DNA of 62,916 nucleotides, filler included, from Octopus bimaculoides (GCF_001194135.2; 6 parts of 6 records of this genome joined end to end with filler, not necessarily neighbours in it), one strand, 5' to 3'; shown: positions 9,208 to 58,371, numbered from the whole stretch's first letter. A program made the numbers and translations. Notes: generated from the letters alone by a model not told the origin.

Positions 9208-12200
9208 TTAATTAGTGGTATTCTAATGGTTTCTAAGCTCTACATTTGATGATACTAAAATTACAATACACACACATTGAGTTGATATCACTATGATTTA
9301 TAATAGATACGTTGCTTGAGAGGTTAAGGTGAGAGAATATTGAGCAATTGTTTCTGACAAAAAAAAAAAAAAGACAATTGTTCCAATAAAAACTGTCTCA
9401 ACCATGAAGAGTAAATGAATGTAAAAACAAAATGGAAACCAAAAAAAAAAAAAAAAAAAAAAAGGAAAAGTAAGACAGATCCTGAATGTACCAGTTCTTA
9501 TCTCGATTAAAGCATGTAGTAAAAAAGTGAAATAAATAAGTAATTAACAAGATTCAGCAAAAATGTAAATGGATTTCCAGTAGTGAGAGTAGCAGTGGCA
9601 TTTCATGAAAGATGCATCGACTGACTGTGAAAAAGGATTCATTCTGGATCCTGGTTAGAAATTGTCCCACATGAATATAATCAATATAGCTGAAGCACTC
9701 AAAGCTGCTTACATTATTAACTGATTGAATCTTACTTTGTTTAACGAGCTGGCATTAGTTGTGACTATAAAATTCCCATGTGGAAAGTGACCAGTCCATT
9801 ATCAAGGAACAGTAATGAAATGTTGCGAAATATAACAGCTTGCCACTATTTCATAATTAAAATGGCAGTTGGTTAGTATTCTATTGAAATGGTCGGCATA
9901 ATTGGCAGTAAATTGAAACCAGTACATAAGCATGAAGTAACTGAGGCAAATTGTGCTGAAACAAAAAGTAACTACAATTAACTAACTGTTTGAAATGTCC
10001 CTTAAGTCACAGAAGTGGATTAGTCACTAAAATTTCATCATGTGTCTTTATTATTATTATGAAACAAGTCATTTTTAATCATGATAATGGAAAATAAAAA
10101 AGTATTTAGATGTCGTAATAATCTAAGAAACGCTTCAACTGAATTTCTTTTTTTTATTTTTTTATTTAACAACAACAAAGCTTTTTAATTCAATGGAAGA
10201 ACTTTCAAAGATTAATCCTTGAGATCCAGATCAAAAGAGAACTTAGTAACAGCTAACAATTAAGCAAATAGCATAGTAAAATATTTTTTTCTTAAAGCCA
10301 TTACAGATGAATTAAAATGATTGCCCTAAAATACGTAATGTAACTTCAAAATATATCTAAATTTAAGAAAGTCAATCTTTCCTAGTTCTTATTTTATATC
10401 AAGTGAAAGATAAATAGTAGAAAGGAACTTGGTTCGTTAGTAAACATTCAATCAACAACTAGAGAATTTATCATCATCGTCATCATCATCATTTGAACGT
10501 CCGCTTTTCCATGCTTGTACTGGTCTTGATTGAAATTCTAGAACAGTTTAGAAGAGAATCTCATCAAGTTGTTGTAGCTATTACAGAATCTCTCCAACAA
10601 ATGTTCCCAGCAGTTAAAATTTGGGGGTTATTTGACAGTTCAGCACCAAATTAATTATGCAATGTCAAGGGCACAGATCACAGTCAAAGAGTTTGGGCTC
10701 ATTTTCTTTCAATTATAATGAAGGTTTACATTTGAAAGAGGTGGAGGCAATTAACTCTCACCTCCACCCCAAATAGTAGACTGGTATTTACCAGAAGAGT
10801 GAGAACAAATCAATCCAAGTGGGATTTGAACTTTAAACACAACAGGACATAATTAGATACTGCAAGACATGTTGTCTGGTGTCCCTATTGATTCAACTAC
10901 TCCTCTCCAGCCTAGGTTTTTGTTTTTCCAATTATGATTAATAAAGTTGTTCAGTAATTAATTTCCAGAAACATGAGGGGGGAAAAAAATTAAGAAAAAC
11001 TATCTCTCTCAAGTAGCATCTGAACTGATAGTTAGTTAAATTAATTAACAATTACATCCATATTTGGACATTTCTCAATATTTGTTGGAGACAAACCCCT
11101 CCTGAATCAAAGAAAATCTAATAAAACCAGTTTAGAAACAGATTAAAGTGGGTTTTGTACAGTTTTGCTTTTTTTTTTAACGAAAGTTTCATTAAAAATG
11201 TGCGCAGAAAATAACAAACAAAATATCTATTTGAAATAACGTCAAAAAGAAAGAAGTCAATCATAATAGCATACTTAATTTTCACTAACATCAGTCTTTT
11301 TCCTTCTATTCTAAGACATAATGAAATTAAATTGAGAAAGACAAACAAAGAAGCTTCTATGTCGTCTCATTTGGTCAGTCAAGTTTCTCAATTATAACAC
11401 TATTTCAAACCTACAAACTTTGTCTTCATATTTGTATTCTTTATTCAATTACTTTACAACCAAAAGCTACAGAACTACCAGAAACAGACATGCATGTAGA
11501 CACACATTCATAGAGGCAGAGAAAATGGTTAAGAAAGCTAGTGTCTGTTACGTTTGCTTGTTGGTTGTCTAAACAATATGTGGTTTTCATGTAGTTCTAC
11601 TTTTTGAATAAAGAACTGTTTGGTTTATGAATCTGTCACTTTAATAATGGATTGACTTTGGAATTATTCCATCATCCTTCATAATGACTAATTATGCATC
11701 AAAGAAGATGAAACTCTCATCAAGAGGAACATCCAACCATTAATCTTTATAGTCAACAAGTTTCTGTGGAATAGATGGGAATAAAAAGACTTTCCAACAT
11801 CATCCTAAGACATAGCATTATGCTGCACATATGTAAATGTTTGTAGAGAGAAATGTAACCCACATAAAAGAAAACTGGATAGTAGGTGACAGACAAAGTG
11901 TGTATGTGTATGTGTATGTGTGTGTGCGCATGGGTGTGTATGCATGGGTGTGTATGTGAGCGTGTGTGCATGTGCATATGAATCTCTGTGTGTGTGCATG
12001 CAGGTGTGTGTGTGTGCATGCAGGTATGTGTGTGCATGTGTGTATGTGAGCATGTATGTATGTGCATATGAATGTGTGTGTGCGTGTATGTATGGGTGTG
12101 TTTGCGAGATTTTTTTAATTTTTATTTTTCTTTATTGCTTACAAGGGGCCAACACAACGGGGATGGGTGTGTATGTGAGCATGTGTGTGCATGTGTATAC

Positions 12201-54431: not shown

Positions 54432-54605
54432 AAAAAACTGAATCTTGATCAATCAGTGTGAAGAATGAGCGATAATATCAAATAAAAACTGAAAAGCTAT
54501 CCCCTTGAAGCACACGCACACACAAACACAAATACACACACGCGCGCGCGAAGAGACACAATCCCCCGCGCCCACTCACACATCATCTGTGTATATAAAA
54601 TACTT

Positions 54606-54653
<48 letters not shown>

Positions 54654-55023
54654 CGCAATCCATTCACAAACGGCTCAATTAGATCAAATCGAATTTTACA
54701 TGGTAATACTATCAGAACCCGCATCAACATGTAATTCTTTCGCATTAAAACTATGTAACATTGGCAATGATTCCGTATTACGTCTCAAAACTCAAAGGAT
54801 AAAAGTGAAAGAATACCATTTATATTGTAATGTGATATATTGTTTCACTTTCATACTTTAATTTTTTTTGTATATTACAGTGTAATTGTCTGTGAATGTA
54901 TGTATGTGTATATATCTCTCTCACTGTGTGTATCATTGTACGTGAGTTAGGTTATTAGACATATGTGTGTGAGGGCTGATCGGTGTTAATGAGAAATTTG
55001 ATTTTCATTTCGATTAAAGTATA
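54432..55023 (-). repeat. Left arm of a ~600-bp inverted duplication (partner 56268-56878)
   Basis: Collinear reverse-complement match over the whole contig, about 94% by manual count, including (GA)n and a CpG-rich GCGCGCGCG patch. Confidence 0.92.
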
Positions 55024-55474
55024 NNNNNNNNNNNNNNNNNNNNNNNNNNNNNNNNNNNNNNNNNNNNNNNNNNNNNNNNNNNNNNNNNNNNNNNNNNNNN
55101 NNNNNNNNNNNNNNNNNNNNNNNTGTCTATATTTTGCATGCAGTGTAAATTAACAAAATATAAGCAAATGAACAAAATAGAAGCACGTGTATGGAACTGC
55201 AAATTTAACGAAAATAACACAAATAATTCTTACAGAGAGACAAAGAATTATATAGATATAGGATACATTTCTTAATGTAAGGGTAAATATGCCTTTACAA
55301 ATACCTTGCAACTGTTGCGATAATTATTAACTGGCAATGGAACAGTAAATGTGTATTTTTGTGTATATCTTGTTCCCTCCCACCGCATTGTGTTTTTCAA
55401 GAATTTCACCTCTAGAACTAACGTACATACATTCAGGCATGTCAGTTGTCATATATGAATATGTATGTGTTGTT

Positions 55475-55512
<38 letters not shown>

Positions 55513-55846
55513 AATAACGTACCGTTACATATGTATGTCTAGATGTATATGTTTATTAACGTACCTAACGCGGAAATACACAGACACTTTTATACATATA
55601 CTCACTTATACACTAACACACATATACTCACAGACAGATGTACAGTCATATACACAATGTGATGTTATCTTCGTGGTATAAAATGTCCCGTAGACAACAG
55701 AAAGACTGCAGCGTGAGAGACGTTTGTAAGCCATTTAAGAACACACAAAAACCGTTAATTTCACTTCGGCATTTAAATTTCATTTGTATCAAAATATTTT
55801 CGTCGCCTTAAAACCCGACCTGCTCACTGACAAGATTTCGTGCTGC

Positions 55847-55877
<31 letters not shown>

Positions 55878-56146
55878 TGTATGTATGTATGTATGTATGT
55901 ATGTATGTATGTATGCATGTATGTATGTATATGTGTAAATGCGCATGCATATACCCATATACTTATCTATGTATGTATGTATGTATGTATGTATGTGTAT
56001 ATGTATGTATGTGAGTATTTACAGATGTAAGTGTATAGAGGTATCTGTCTTTGTGTATATGTATATGCACATGTAAATATATATTCATGTACTGATTCAT
56101 GTGTATGTCATCAAATTGTATATATAACTGTTACTCCGTCAAATTT

Positions 56147-56188
<42 letters not shown>

Positions 56189-56267
56189 CCGAGCACGCAA
56201 TCTCAGATCAAGTCACTTGCTATGCAAGTACATCTGCGTAAATAGAAAAACTATCTCTATGAAATGT

Positions 56268-56636
56268 TATAGTTTACTCGAAATGAATATCAAATTTCTC
56301 ATTGACACCGATCAGCCCTCACACACATGTTTAATAACCGAACTCATGCGGAAAGATACACACAGTGTGAGATATATATACACACACATACATTCACAGA
56401 CAATTACACTGTAATATACAAACAAAATTAAAAGTATGAAAGTGAAACAATATATCACATTACAATATATATGGAATTTTTTCAGTTTTATCCTTTGATT
56501 TTTGAGACGTAATACGAATCATTGCCAATGTTGCATAGTTTTAATGCGAAAGAATTACATGTGGACACGGGTTCCTGATAGTATTACCATGTAAAATTCG
56601 ATTTGATCTAATTGAGCCGTTTGTGAATGGATTGCG

Positions 56637-56704
<68 letters not shown>

Positions 56705-56878
56705 AAGGATTTTATATATACAGATGATGTGTGAGTGGGCGCGGGTGATTGTGTCTCTTCGCGCGCGCGTGTGTGTATGTGTGTTTGTGTGTGCGTGTGC
56801 TTCAAGGGGATAGCTTTTCAGTTTTTATTTGTTATTATCGCTCATTCTTCACACTGATTGACCAAGATTCAGTTTTTT
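56268..56878 (+). repeat. Right arm of the inverted duplication; lies immediately upstream of the LRR exon
   Basis: See left arm. It ends about 25 bp before a GTAAGT donor at 56905. Confidence 0.92.
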
Positions 56879-56904
56879 TTTAATTTTTAATTATGACTTT
56901 GAAA
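56700..56904 (+). promoter_or_regulatory. Putative promoter / 5' UTR exon of the LRR gene
   Basis: TATATATA at 56713-56720, CpG-rich patch at 56739-56770, TCAGT Inr-like motifs at 56818 and 56869, donor AAA/GTAAGT at 56904/56905 giving a 124-nt intron to the acceptor at 57028. TSS unknown. Confidence 0.4.
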
Positions 56905-57032
56905 GTAAGTGAAATCAATGATAAATTCCTCGCATGAAACATGGAGCAATTTTTGTCCTTCATAGAATCTGAAAAAGGAATGAAATAATTATGGAGTGCC
57001 TGATATTTTATATTTTATTCTTTTACAGATTA

Positions 57033-57223
57033 ATGCGGCGACAAAATCTCCATGTTATGTTCACCTTTGTGTTGATACTGTACATGAGATTACTTTTGGA
57101 GGCTCATACTGTTTCAGACGTTTGCAGTATTAGTAGATGTGATTTGGTAAGTCAGGAAATACATTGTGAAAATCGCAATTTGCCTTCTGTTCCAGAAAAT
57201 ATTCCCCAGAATGTTCGGATATT
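57033..57223 (+). CDS. First coding exon of a secreted or membrane leucine-rich-repeat protein (signal peptide + LRRNT cap)
   Basis: MRRQNLHVMFTFVLILYMRLLLEAHT-VSDVCSISRCDLVSQEIHCENRNLPSVPENIPQNVRI(L). Hydrophobic leader, then the LRRNT pattern C..C...C..RNL..VP.NIP..V..L. Strong acceptor (TTTTATTCTTTTACAG, exon start 57029) and phase-2 donor TT/GTAAGT at the position typical of LRR introns. Confidence 0.75.
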
Positions 57224-57769
57224 GTAAGTATTGGACATTTTGTTTTTACATATTTACACATTCAGTGTTTTAAATCCTCATTGATTATGTTTAAGCAAAT
57301 ACCTTATTGTGTTGATTTCACGGCTTTAAACACCAATTTATGTTGTAGTAAAGGAAGCCGATATGTTACTAGGCATGAAATCAGGTAAAAGGTTTTTCAA
57401 TATATATTGATTTATTTTTAATTTCCATATCTAAACGGTTGCACGAGTTGTATTAAACAGAAAACTGTCCCACAAAATTCCAACTGACAAATCGATGTTC
57501 CTACTCCCACACTATTTTCGGTATTCTTTGCTCTTCTGCTTACGCATGCATTCCACGACTGTGATAATGGATGTCCTCTTGCAGTTCAGGACTACTCGGA
57601 GAGTCTTCAGTTTTCCAAACATCCGTCTTGTCGCTTCAAGTTATATATGTACGTATGTATGTATGATTTTCGTTGTATTTAATTTGAGTTCTTGAGAGAT
57701 TTCAAGCCGGTTACTAACAAACCAACAAGACATTTTCAGTTAAATGAGTTCCCGGTGTTTGCAAATATA

Positions 57770-58371
57770 CGGTCGAGTTGGCTTGTTGGTTGAACTCTCG
57801 ATGCGTACACCCAAGGATCGGTTCCTTTCTCTCTTCACATCAGGCTCAATTCCTTTCTCTCTTCTTCCGTGAAACCGAGTATTTCTAGGTTTTAGTATAC
57901 ATTTGTTGATATATAACCTAGTGCACTTATGATGATAGGTACAAATGAAAATACATAGTAAGGTTACAAGAGTTGTAAGTTCCGCATTAATTCGCCATAA
58001 ACGTTCACTTTTTCGTGGACCTTTGATTGTACATTCACATCTGCAGGCCAGTTGACCTCTGCGGCAGTACATGACTTTTGTCCACTGTCCCACAAAACAA
58101 CATCAGGCCTGTTAAGTTTCTATTTGGGTGTTCTATCGATGCTCCTTCTTTTTAACGGTGTGAATACATGCTGGTTCTGAGATGCCATTGATGTATACGT
58201 CAAGGCAGTCCTTCCAACGGATAGCTTTGTAAATAGTCTTTGCCTTAGAAATATGTCATACGTAGCGGCAGATAGTATTTTATAAGCATTTTGGGGTATC
58301 TGCTAATGATGTGAGTGATATCTTCTACACTGGTATAGCAGAGCCGATATTCTTTTATCACGGTGTGGATA
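57770..58371 (-). pseudogene. R4/Dong-like non-LTR 3' fragment (zinc knuckle + restriction-like endonuclease)
   Basis: With frameshifts: RLCYTSVEDITHIISRYPKMLIKYYLPLR, AKTIYKAI, NRPDVVLWDSGQKSCTAAEVNWPADVNVQSKVHEKVNVYGELMRNLQLL*PYYVFSFVPIIISALGYIS. Confidence 0.8.

What the first reader, a model, noticed from the sequence alone, without database searches (positions are those of the whole stretch)
54432..57223. Inverted duplication of an LRR gene's upstream region: possible head-to-head paralog pair with a hidden left partner
Seen: 54432-55023 and 56268-56878 are ~94% identical inverted arms. The right arm runs into a donor (56905), a 124-nt intron and a signal-peptide/LRRNT exon. The left arm points outward and is cut by a scaffold join about 150 bp before a twin exon would begin. 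About 6% divergence seems high for an uncollapsed allele. Inference: a divergently transcribed pair of young LRR paralogs sharing a ~1.2-kb intergenic spacer, as expected in an expanding receptor or immune gene cluster. The alternative is the long TIRs of a transposon that donated a promoter.
Basis: partly seen in the sequence, partly recalled or inferred. Interest (0 to 1): 0.7.

Follow-up and report, generated by a model that had tools for sequence, protein, structure and literature searches.

The report
Inverted repeat beside octopus receptor gene
The start of an octopus leucine-rich-repeat adhesion-receptor gene has a second, 5%-different, reversed copy of its upstream region, but that copy is one small separately assembled contig joined across an unread gap, so a hidden head-to-head twin gene is plausible and unproven.

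Summary
The inverted repeat is real in the sequence. 54432-55023 reversed aligns end to end with 56268-56878, with 559 matches, 30 mismatches and 5 indels. The left arm is exactly one whole 592-bp contig, bounded by the piece edge and the N gap, so both of its limits are assembly limits. Nothing shows continuity across the gap. The exon at 57033-57223 is the signal-peptide/LRRNT exon of an octopus-specific family of LRR adhesion GPCRs. Its closest relative is O. bimaculoides LOC106877970, at 77% amino-acid identity and 88% DNA identity over 1 kb. Paralogous loci align straight across the outer end of the arm, which rejects the transposon-TIR alternative. In O. bimaculoides the two closest relatives already sit head-to-head 21 kb apart with inverted homologous upstream segments, so the proposed architecture has a precedent. 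No twin exon is visible. The arrangement rests on a single unsized join, and duplicates that abut gaps are common in octopus assemblies. My estimates are 0.4 for a real cis inverted duplication, 0.3 for an uncollapsed allele and 0.2 for a misplaced paralogous contig. The finding is ordinary in kind and of low interest.

The parts
54432..55023 (-). Left arm. This is a complete 592-bp contig and a reversed copy of 56268-56878. It carries (TC)21.5 at 54608-54650.
   Evidence: It is bounded by the piece edge and the N gap.
55024..55123 (.). Assembly gap of 100 N, true length unknown. It is the only link between the left arm and the rest of the piece.
   Evidence: One search finds no overlap and no mirrored continuation across it.
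55124..56267 (.). Spacer. It is non-coding and rich in microsatellites: (GT)17 at 55477-55510, (TATG)41 at 55848-56012 and (TA)18 at 56149-56185.
   Evidence: Rfam gives only sub-threshold microsatellite look-alikes.
55707..55837 (+). Segment Y. It is 78% identical to O. bimaculoides L006 7791-7915, which is half of a 184-bp segment upstream of paralog P0003.
56186..56241 (-). Segment X. It is 91% identical to L006 7727-7781, the other half of the same 184-bp segment. It lies in the opposite orientation, 26 nt inside the inner end of the right arm.
56268..56878 (+). Right arm. It carries (AG)31.5 at 56640-56702 and a TATA-like TATATATA at 56713-56720. Its outer ~90 nt (56790-56878) is part of a 5' element conserved in paralogs.
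56810..56897 (+). Conserved family 5' element that spans the outer arm end at 56878. It aligns to paralog loci L007 9792-9893 and, in part, to L001 9723-9779.
   Evidence: score 36 against a shuffle maximum of 24 for L007, and 26 against 21 for L001. Also.
56905..57028 (+). Predicted 124-nt intron. The acceptor TTTTACAG is conserved in all paralogs; the proximal donor is not confirmed.
   Evidence: Identity to L005 over 56921-57028 is 97%.
57029..57223 (+). Exon with ATG at 57033. It encodes the signal peptide and LRRNT cap (63 codons plus 2 nt, phase-2 end). Ser replaces the second family cysteine at 57132-57134.
56921..57887 (+). Block 88% identical to O. bimaculoides LOC106877970 (L005 11853-12841).
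   Evidence: The homology starts at an N gap in L005.
57888..58371 (.). Intron sequence with no counterpart in L005. It may be an insertion. The next (LRR) exon is expected beyond the piece edge.
   Evidence: Pfam finds nothing in the three minus-strand frames tested.

Best explanation
The piece is the 5' end of an octopus gene for a leucine-rich-repeat adhesion GPCR (ADGRA2/3-like). Its closest known relative is O. bimaculoides LOC106877970. The two arms are two copies of that gene's promoter-proximal flank.

The most likely origin is a recent local inverted duplication, of the kind by which this clustered family grows. On that reading, the left copy continues outward into a twin 5' exon, intron and LRRNT exon. 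Those parts are too similar to the right copy (97-100% at the last visible bases) to have been assembled separately, so only the more diverged inner 592 bp survived as its own contig.

Shown: the repeat; the gene identity; that the outer arm end is not a biological boundary; and the family precedent for divergent pairs.

Inferred: that both copies lie on one chromosome, in this orientation, and that a twin coding exon exists.
For: 1. The differences look like real sequence divergence rather than noise. There are 30 substitutions at ts:tv 12:18, matching octopus inter-locus controls at 41:43, 58:61 and 15:32. There is about 1 indel per 6 substitutions, against about 1 per 10 in the piece-versus-L005 control.

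2. Substitution divergence of 5.1% far exceeds the published octopus heterozygosity of >1.1% in O. vulgaris (PMC6472339).

3. The gene belongs to an octopus-specific, locally duplicating adhesion-GPCR expansion (PMC6408891).

4. In the O. bimaculoides chromosome assembly, the two closest relatives lie on opposite strands with start codons 21.4 kb apart. They are P0001/LOC106877970 and P0003. Their upstream segments are inverted homologs (L005 9774-10471 versus L006 7385-8261, 70-82% identity).

5. Paralogs align across 56878, so the duplicated unit extends toward the exon.

6. Identity rises to 97-100% at the outer end. This is as expected if the remainder of the left copy collapsed onto the right copy.

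7. A strand switch independent of the gap exists inside the spacer: segments X and Y.
Against: 1. The left arm is exactly one small contig, and its only link is an unsized 100-N join. 100-N gaps in the octopus chromosome assemblies sampled (L001, L002, L008) are probably proximity-ligation joins, which orient short contigs poorly; that attribution and property come from my own background knowledge.

2. No twin exon is present, and no mirrored sequence continues past the gap.

3. A gap between the two copies on one scaffold is a listed hallmark of false duplication (PMC9516828).

4. In eight octopus loci, 6 of 44 gaps have a duplicate abutting the gap, one of them inverted.

5. The source species, and therefore its heterozygosity, is unknown.
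Confidence: 0.4

Rival explanations
1. False (heterotype) duplication. The 592-bp contig is the other haplotype of 56268-56878. It was too divergent to collapse and was attached next to its partner in arbitrary orientation by a scaffolder that neither sizes gaps nor orients short contigs reliably.
For: The arm equals a whole contig between the scaffold end and a gap. The gap lies between the two copies, the criterion from PMC9516828. Identity converges toward one end, like a bubble arm. The (AG)n length difference and homopolymer indels are typical allelic variation. Some octopus genomes are heterozygous (>1.1%), and assemblers produce separate allelic contigs (PMC6472339). Gap-abutting duplicates are frequent in octopus assemblies.
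Against: 5.1% substitutions plus 5 indels in 600 bp is several times the genome-wide heterozygosity reported for O. vulgaris. It would be far above the value I recall, from memory and unchecked, for O. bimaculoides (about 0.1%). Paired-end scaffolding would not place an allelic contig in inverted orientation 1.2 kb away. The inner end of the contig stays divergent up to its last bases (mismatches 5, 10 and 21 nt from the end), so it is not a clean bubble. Location in a known expanding family favours paralogy.
Confidence: 0.3
2. A real young paralog, but placed wrongly. The contig comes from another recently duplicated family member, either in tandem or elsewhere in the cluster. Its placement and orientation next to this gene are a scaffolding error caused by the similarity of the two copies.
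For: The family is clustered, with many members on one O. bimaculoides chromosome. The 5' element is shared among paralogs. The join is unsized. Contigs this short are hard to orient (background knowledge).
Against: No other copy of the arm was seen in 267 kb around seven family loci (L001-L008) from three species. Known paralogs are only about 70% identical in this region, not 95%.
Confidence: 0.2
3. The arms are the long terminal inverted repeats of a transposon or foldback element that donated a promoter.
For: The structure has roughly 600-bp inverted arms containing simple repeats and a non-coding 1.2-kb centre.
Against: Paralogous loci in O. bimaculoides and O. sinensis align without a break across the outer arm end into the intron and exon. 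The arm end is therefore a contig end, not an element terminus. The spacer has no transposase-like ORF. No second copy was found in 267 kb of octopus DNA, whereas a genuine ~370-bp interspersed repeat shows up many times in the same sample. A target-site duplication cannot be examined.
Confidence: 0.03

Closest known systems
O. bimaculoides LOC106877970 (XP_052833773.1 / XP_014782533.1), a member of the octopus-specific adhesion-GPCR expansion ('group 3' of Ritschard et al. 2019, PMC6408891)
   Same: The signal-peptide/LRRNT exon is 77% identical in protein. DNA is 88% identical over 967 nt, including both flanking introns. The acceptor and the phase-2 exon end are the same. The family carries LRRs followed by an ADGRA3-type GAIN/GPS domain and a secretin-type 7TM.
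   Different: It is not the same locus: it is either a paralog or an ortholog from a related species. This exon has Ser in place of the second LRRNT cysteine and a 3-nt deletion, and dN/dS is about 0.95. The upstream arm cannot be compared, because the O. bimaculoides assembly has a gap there.
The divergent pair LOC106877970 (P0001) / XP_014782534.1 (P0003) on O. bimaculoides CM046629.1
   Same: Two family members lie on opposite strands, head-to-head, with inverted homologous upstream segments.
   Different: That pair is old (70-82% upstream identity, about 60% protein identity in the first exon) and widely spaced (21.4 kb between start codons). The case here would be 95% identical and about 2.4 kb apart, with the partner unseen.
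Heterotype false duplication in draft assemblies (Ko et al. 2022, PMC9516828)
   Same: The two duplicated copies sit on one scaffold and are separated by a gap. One copy is a whole small contig, and the copies differ by a few percent.
   Different: Read depth, k-mer multiplicity and read-pair concordance, which are the defining tests, are not available here. The inverted orientation and 5% divergence are less typical.
Foldback / long-TIR transposons
   Same: Long inverted arms containing simple repeats, and a short non-coding centre.
   Different: The arm end is not an element boundary. There is no evidence of multiple copies and no transposase.

Membership tests
Octopus LRR adhesion-GPCR family (ADGRA2/3-like expansion) | N-terminal exon encoding a signal peptide plus an LRRNT cysteine cap, homologous to family members | tested here: met
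   phmmer finds 28 relatives, the best at 1.6e-21 and 77% identity. Every relative that carries a species name is from Octopus. All 28 weak PDB hits align to LRRNT caps. One of the four cap cysteines is Ser here.
Octopus LRR adhesion-GPCR family (ADGRA2/3-like expansion) | Leucine-rich repeats following the cap | not testable with these tools
   In the closest relative the first LRR exon (72 nt) lies 1.87 kb after this exon. Only 1.15 kb remains in the piece.
Octopus LRR adhesion-GPCR family (ADGRA2/3-like expansion) | GAIN/GPS domain and secretin-type 7TM domain | not testable with these tools
   These domains are present in relatives (PF26588, PF01825, PF00002) but would lie far outside the piece.
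Head-to-head (divergent) paralog pair from inverted segmental duplication | Two copies of the coding exon on opposite strands | tested here: not met
   tblastn finds a single copy of the exon in the piece. The twin would lie beyond the piece edge, so this result is non-decisive.
Head-to-head (divergent) paralog pair from inverted segmental duplication | Both copies contiguous on one DNA molecule in inverted orientation | tested here: inconclusive
   The copies are linked only by a 100-N gap. There is no overlap and no mirrored continuation. An independent strand switch (X/Y) exists in the spacer.
Head-to-head (divergent) paralog pair from inverted segmental duplication | Two copies per haploid genome (full read depth on each) | not testable with these tools
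   No reads are available. No copy of this locus was retrievable: exact look-ups were negative and metagenome scans were negative.
Heterotype false duplication | Assembly gap between the duplicated copies on the same scaffold, with one copy being a whole contig | tested here: met
   The criterion comes from PMC9516828.
Heterotype false duplication | Half read depth, haplotype-specific k-mers, discordant read pairs | not testable with these tools
   No read data.
Long-TIR / foldback transposon | Arm ends are element termini, so homology to loci lacking the element breaks there | tested here: not met
   L007, L001 and L004 align across 56878.
Long-TIR / foldback transposon | Multiple genomic copies | tested here: not met
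   No copy was found in 267 kb from three Octopus species. The sample is small and the species may differ.
Long-TIR / foldback transposon | Target-site duplication | not testable with these tools
   The left outer flank is cut off by the piece edge.

The most novel reading that the evidence does not exclude
A very young (about 5% diverged) head-to-head pair of LRR adhesion-GPCR genes shares a compact ~2.4-kb bidirectional upstream region. It would have been caught soon after an inverted duplication in the octopus-specific receptor cluster, with a further small inversion (X/Y) in the spacer. This would be a snapshot of how the expansion grows, and of how new copies share or partition a promoter.
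Probability: 0.35. Interest if true: 0.3.

Novelty: new member of a known kind. Interest (0 to 1): 0.18.

Why it matters
If the duplication is real, it adds one very recent duplicate to an already described octopus-specific adhesion-GPCR expansion. That expansion is tandem-clustered and positively selected, and many of its genes are expressed in the axial nerve cord, suckers and skin of O. bimaculoides (PMC6408891). It would also show that inverted duplication, not only tandem duplication, feeds the expansion. If it is an artefact, it is a reminder that gene-family counts in draft cephalopod assemblies are inflated by small contigs next to gaps. In either case, no new kind of element or mechanism is involved.

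Tried and rejected
1. Searches with the 64-aa exon against the word-indexed 5.8-billion protein set and against Pfam found nothing. Only the exhaustive representative search found the family.

2. Exact look-ups of 11 products from the piece found nothing. Two metagenome scans, with an arm 24-mer and an exon 32-mer, also found nothing. The same locus in another assembly could therefore not be fetched, and the source species stays unknown.

None is this locus. The likely O. sinensis ortholog region lies about 5 kb beyond the end of L003 and could not be reached.

4. I tested whether the inner arm is homologous to the upstream-exon/intron segment of L005/L006, which would have reversed the polarity of the story. 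Scores fell within shuffle range, so the idea was rejected.

5. I tested whether the gap-abutting inverted repeat upstream of paralog P0012 is homologous to these arms. That repeat is L007 8226-8360 versus 9424-9558, at 98.5% identity. Homology would have implied a conserved promoter palindrome. The result was not significant (110/1000 and 24/1000 shuffles reached the score), so the idea was rejected.

6. Rfam gave only sub-threshold miRNA look-alikes inside (TATG)n, which I judge spurious. No tRNA was found.

7. By eye, the minus strand of 57740-58371 resembles a decayed retroelement tail. Pfam gave nothing and no copy exists in the fetched loci, so this is left unverified.

8. The transition:transversion ratio did not discriminate error from biology. 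Octopus controls also sit near or below 1:1.

Full report
**What is in the sequence**

The piece (54432-58371) consists of three parts: a 592-bp contig (54432-55023), 100 N (55024-55123) and a 3248-bp contig (55124-58371).

The reverse complement of the whole first contig aligns end to end with 56268-56878. The alignment has 559 matches, 30 mismatches and 25 gap bases in five events. Those events are a 20-nt (AG)n length difference, one 2-nt indel and three 1-nt homopolymer indels. The repeat is far beyond chance: 571 shared 15-mers against at most 6 in shuffles.

Identity is 89% in the 100 nt next to the gap and rises to 97-100% at the gene-proximal end. The substitution spectrum (12 transitions, 18 transversions) matches genuine octopus inter-locus divergence (41:43, 58:61, 15:32). 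The indel-to-substitution ratio is similar to the piece-versus-L005 control. The differences are therefore biological, not consensus noise.

The decisive anatomical point is that the left arm is exactly one whole contig. Its outer limit is the piece edge and its inner limit is the gap, so neither limit says where the duplication really ends.

**The gap**

No supported reading frame crosses the gap. The contig ends do not overlap. The unique 82 nt just inside the right arm (56186-56267) is not mirrored to the right of the gap; all scores fall within shuffle range. Continuity is therefore unproven, and the '1.2-kb shared spacer' contains an unknown amount of sequence.

**The gene**

The exon starts at the ATG at 57033 and ends at 57223, before GTAAGT. 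It encodes a hydrophobic signal peptide and a cysteine cap.

Pfam and the word-indexed search were silent. The exhaustive search found 28 relatives. Every relative that carries a species name is from Octopus bimaculoides, O. sinensis or O. vulgaris. The relatives continue with LRR_8/LRR_4 repeats, and several carry an ADGRA3-type GAIN domain, GPS and a secretin-type 7TM domain. This is the octopus-specific adhesion-GPCR expansion described by Ritschard et al. 2019 (PMC6408891). All 28 weak PDB matches map residues 30-64 onto LRRNT caps.

The closest relative is LOC106877970 of O. bimaculoides: 77% protein identity, and 88% DNA identity over 56921-57887 against L005 11853-12841. By segment, identity is 97% in the last 108 nt before the acceptor and 90% in the exon and in the next intron.

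That level equals what I measured between orthologous O. sinensis and O. bimaculoides DNA at the 3' part of the same gene (78-90%). It is also near the published 92.4% similarity between O. vulgaris and O. bimaculoides (PMC6472339). The piece may therefore be an ortholog from a related octopus or a paralog within one species. I could not decide which.

In the relative, each LRR has its own 72-nt exon about 2 kb apart, and the first lies 1.87 kb downstream. The absence of LRR exons in the remaining 1.15 kb of the piece is therefore expected.

**Gene-structure caveats**

The acceptor TTTTACAG at 57028 is conserved in every paralog examined. The proposed donor at 56905 is not clearly conserved.

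The annotated O. bimaculoides model splices this acceptor to a coding exon 1.9 kb upstream. In addition, an out-of-frame ATG (56893) sits 12 nt before the proposed donor. The 124-nt intron is plausible but not verified.

The exon has Ser where the family has its second cap cysteine (57132-57134). dN/dS against the relative is about 0.95, with all changes in the mature part. This fits either diversifying selection, which has been reported for the expansion, or decay.

**Is the arm a transposon end?**

No. The outer ~90 nt of the right arm belongs to a 5' element conserved in paralogs. L007 aligns from 56810 to 56897, straight across the arm end at 56878 (score 36 against a shuffle maximum of 24). 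L001 also aligns significantly (26 against 21).

The spacer has no credible ORF. The arm does not recur in 267 kb of DNA from three Octopus species, although a true ~370-bp interspersed repeat appears there many times.

The duplicated unit therefore probably extends toward the exon. That is what both the 'twin gene' reading and the 'second haplotype' reading predict.

On O. bimaculoides chromosome CM046629.1, LOC106877970 (minus strand, ATG at 865,917) and XP_014782534.1 (plus strand, ATG at 887,360) are head-to-head. Their upstream segments are inverted homologs at 70-82% identity. Inverted duplication has therefore already contributed to this family.

**Reasons for caution**

A gap between two copies on one scaffold is a listed hallmark of false duplication, together with half read depth, which I cannot measure (PMC9516828).

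As a control I examined the flanks of the 44 N runs in the eight fetched loci. Six have a duplicate that directly abuts the gap, and one of these is inverted. That one is L007 8226-8360 versus 9424-9558 (98.5% identity), upstream of another family member. It shows no significant homology to the arms here.

In O. bimaculoides the region homologous to the arm falls in an N gap (L005 11615-11852). This promoter-proximal, microsatellite-rich sequence is evidently hard to assemble.

The gap here is exactly 100 N. That matches the unsized-join convention seen in the O. sinensis, O. vulgaris and O. bimaculoides chromosome assemblies. Such joins orient short contigs poorly (background knowledge).

**Weighing the explanations**

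For a real second genomic copy:
- 5.1% substitutions plus five indels is several times the reported octopus heterozygosity.
- The locus belongs to a family known to duplicate locally.
- Ordinary paired-end scaffolding would not place an allelic contig in reverse orientation 1.2 kb away.
- The rise of identity to about 100% at the outer end explains why only 592 bp of a left copy would assemble separately.

For an artefact:
- The contig and gap anatomy.
- The unsized join.
- The ascertainment effect: uncollapsed haplotypes are by definition the most divergent ones.

My estimates are 0.40 for a real cis inverted duplication, with a twin exon likely but unseen. I give 0.30 to an allelic false duplication, 0.20 to a real young paralog placed or oriented wrongly, and 0.03 to a transposon.

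**Unexplained**

A 184-bp segment is present upstream of paralog P0003 (L006 7729-7912) and absent from its inverted partner locus. In the piece it occurs as two halves in opposite orientation on either side of the (TATG)n/(TA)n block. Y is at 55707-55837 (+) and X is at 56186-56241 (-). Both halves are broken at the same internal point.

This strand switch lies inside the large contig and does not depend on the gap. It could be a small inversion, the centre of a fold-back duplication, or a mis-join through the microsatellites.

**Verdict**

The repeat is real in the assembly and the gene call is right, and is now specific. The transposon alternative is rejected. The hidden twin is plausible but undemonstrated. 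In kind this is an ordinary event in a known expanding family, or an ordinary assembly artefact.

Noticed in passing
window 57132-57134: The second cysteine of the LRRNT cap, nearly invariant in the family alignment, is Ser here (AGT against TGT in the closest relative). dN/dS for the exon against O. bimaculoides LOC106877970 is about 0.95, with all changes after the signal peptide. This could reflect diversifying selection or an early pseudogene.
   Followed up: partly
window 55707-55837 and 56186-56241: Two halves of a 184-bp segment known from O. bimaculoides L006 7729-7912 lie in opposite orientation on either side of the microsatellite block, broken at the same internal point. This strand switch inside the large contig is independent of the N gap.
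   Followed up: partly
window 56893-56904: An ATG lies 12 nt before the proposed donor. It is out of frame with the main ORF if the 124-nt intron is spliced. The closest annotated relative instead uses a coding first exon 1.9 kb upstream of the same acceptor.
   Followed up: partly
L005 11615-11852 (O. bimaculoides CM046629.1): The O. bimaculoides chromosome assembly has an N gap exactly where the homolog of the arm and 5' element should be. The same promoter-proximal region resisted assembly there too.
   Followed up: yes
L005 9774-10471 and L006 7385-8261: LOC106877970 and XP_014782534.1 are a divergent head-to-head pair with start codons 21.4 kb apart. Their upstream segments are inverted homologs at 70-82% identity, which marks an older inverted duplication in the same family.
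   Followed up: yes
L007 8226-8360 and 9424-9558: A 135-nt inverted repeat at 98.5% identity, each copy ending at or within 3 nt of an assembly gap, lies just upstream of another family member (P0012). Its topology resembles this finding, but it has no significant homology to these arms.
   Followed up: yes
L006 1892-2274, 4376-4769, 10387-10769 and others; L008 33371-33741: An abundant ~370-bp interspersed repeat, probably SINE-like, has copies 91-94% identical to one another and is shared by O. bimaculoides and O. vulgaris. It makes many chance inverted pairs of about 94% identity in octopus DNA. The arms studied here are not members.
   Followed up: partly
window 57888-58371: Homology to the O. 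bimaculoides locus stops at 57887. On the minus strand, the remaining sequence reads by eye like a decayed retroelement tail (the 117-aa ORF at 57740-58093 overlaps it). No Pfam match and no second copy were found.
   Followed up: partly
window 55840-56210: Sub-threshold Rfam matches to mir-297, mir-466, mir-3149 and similar families all fall inside the (TATG)n/(TA)n microsatellite block. I judge them to be composition artefacts.
   Followed up: yes
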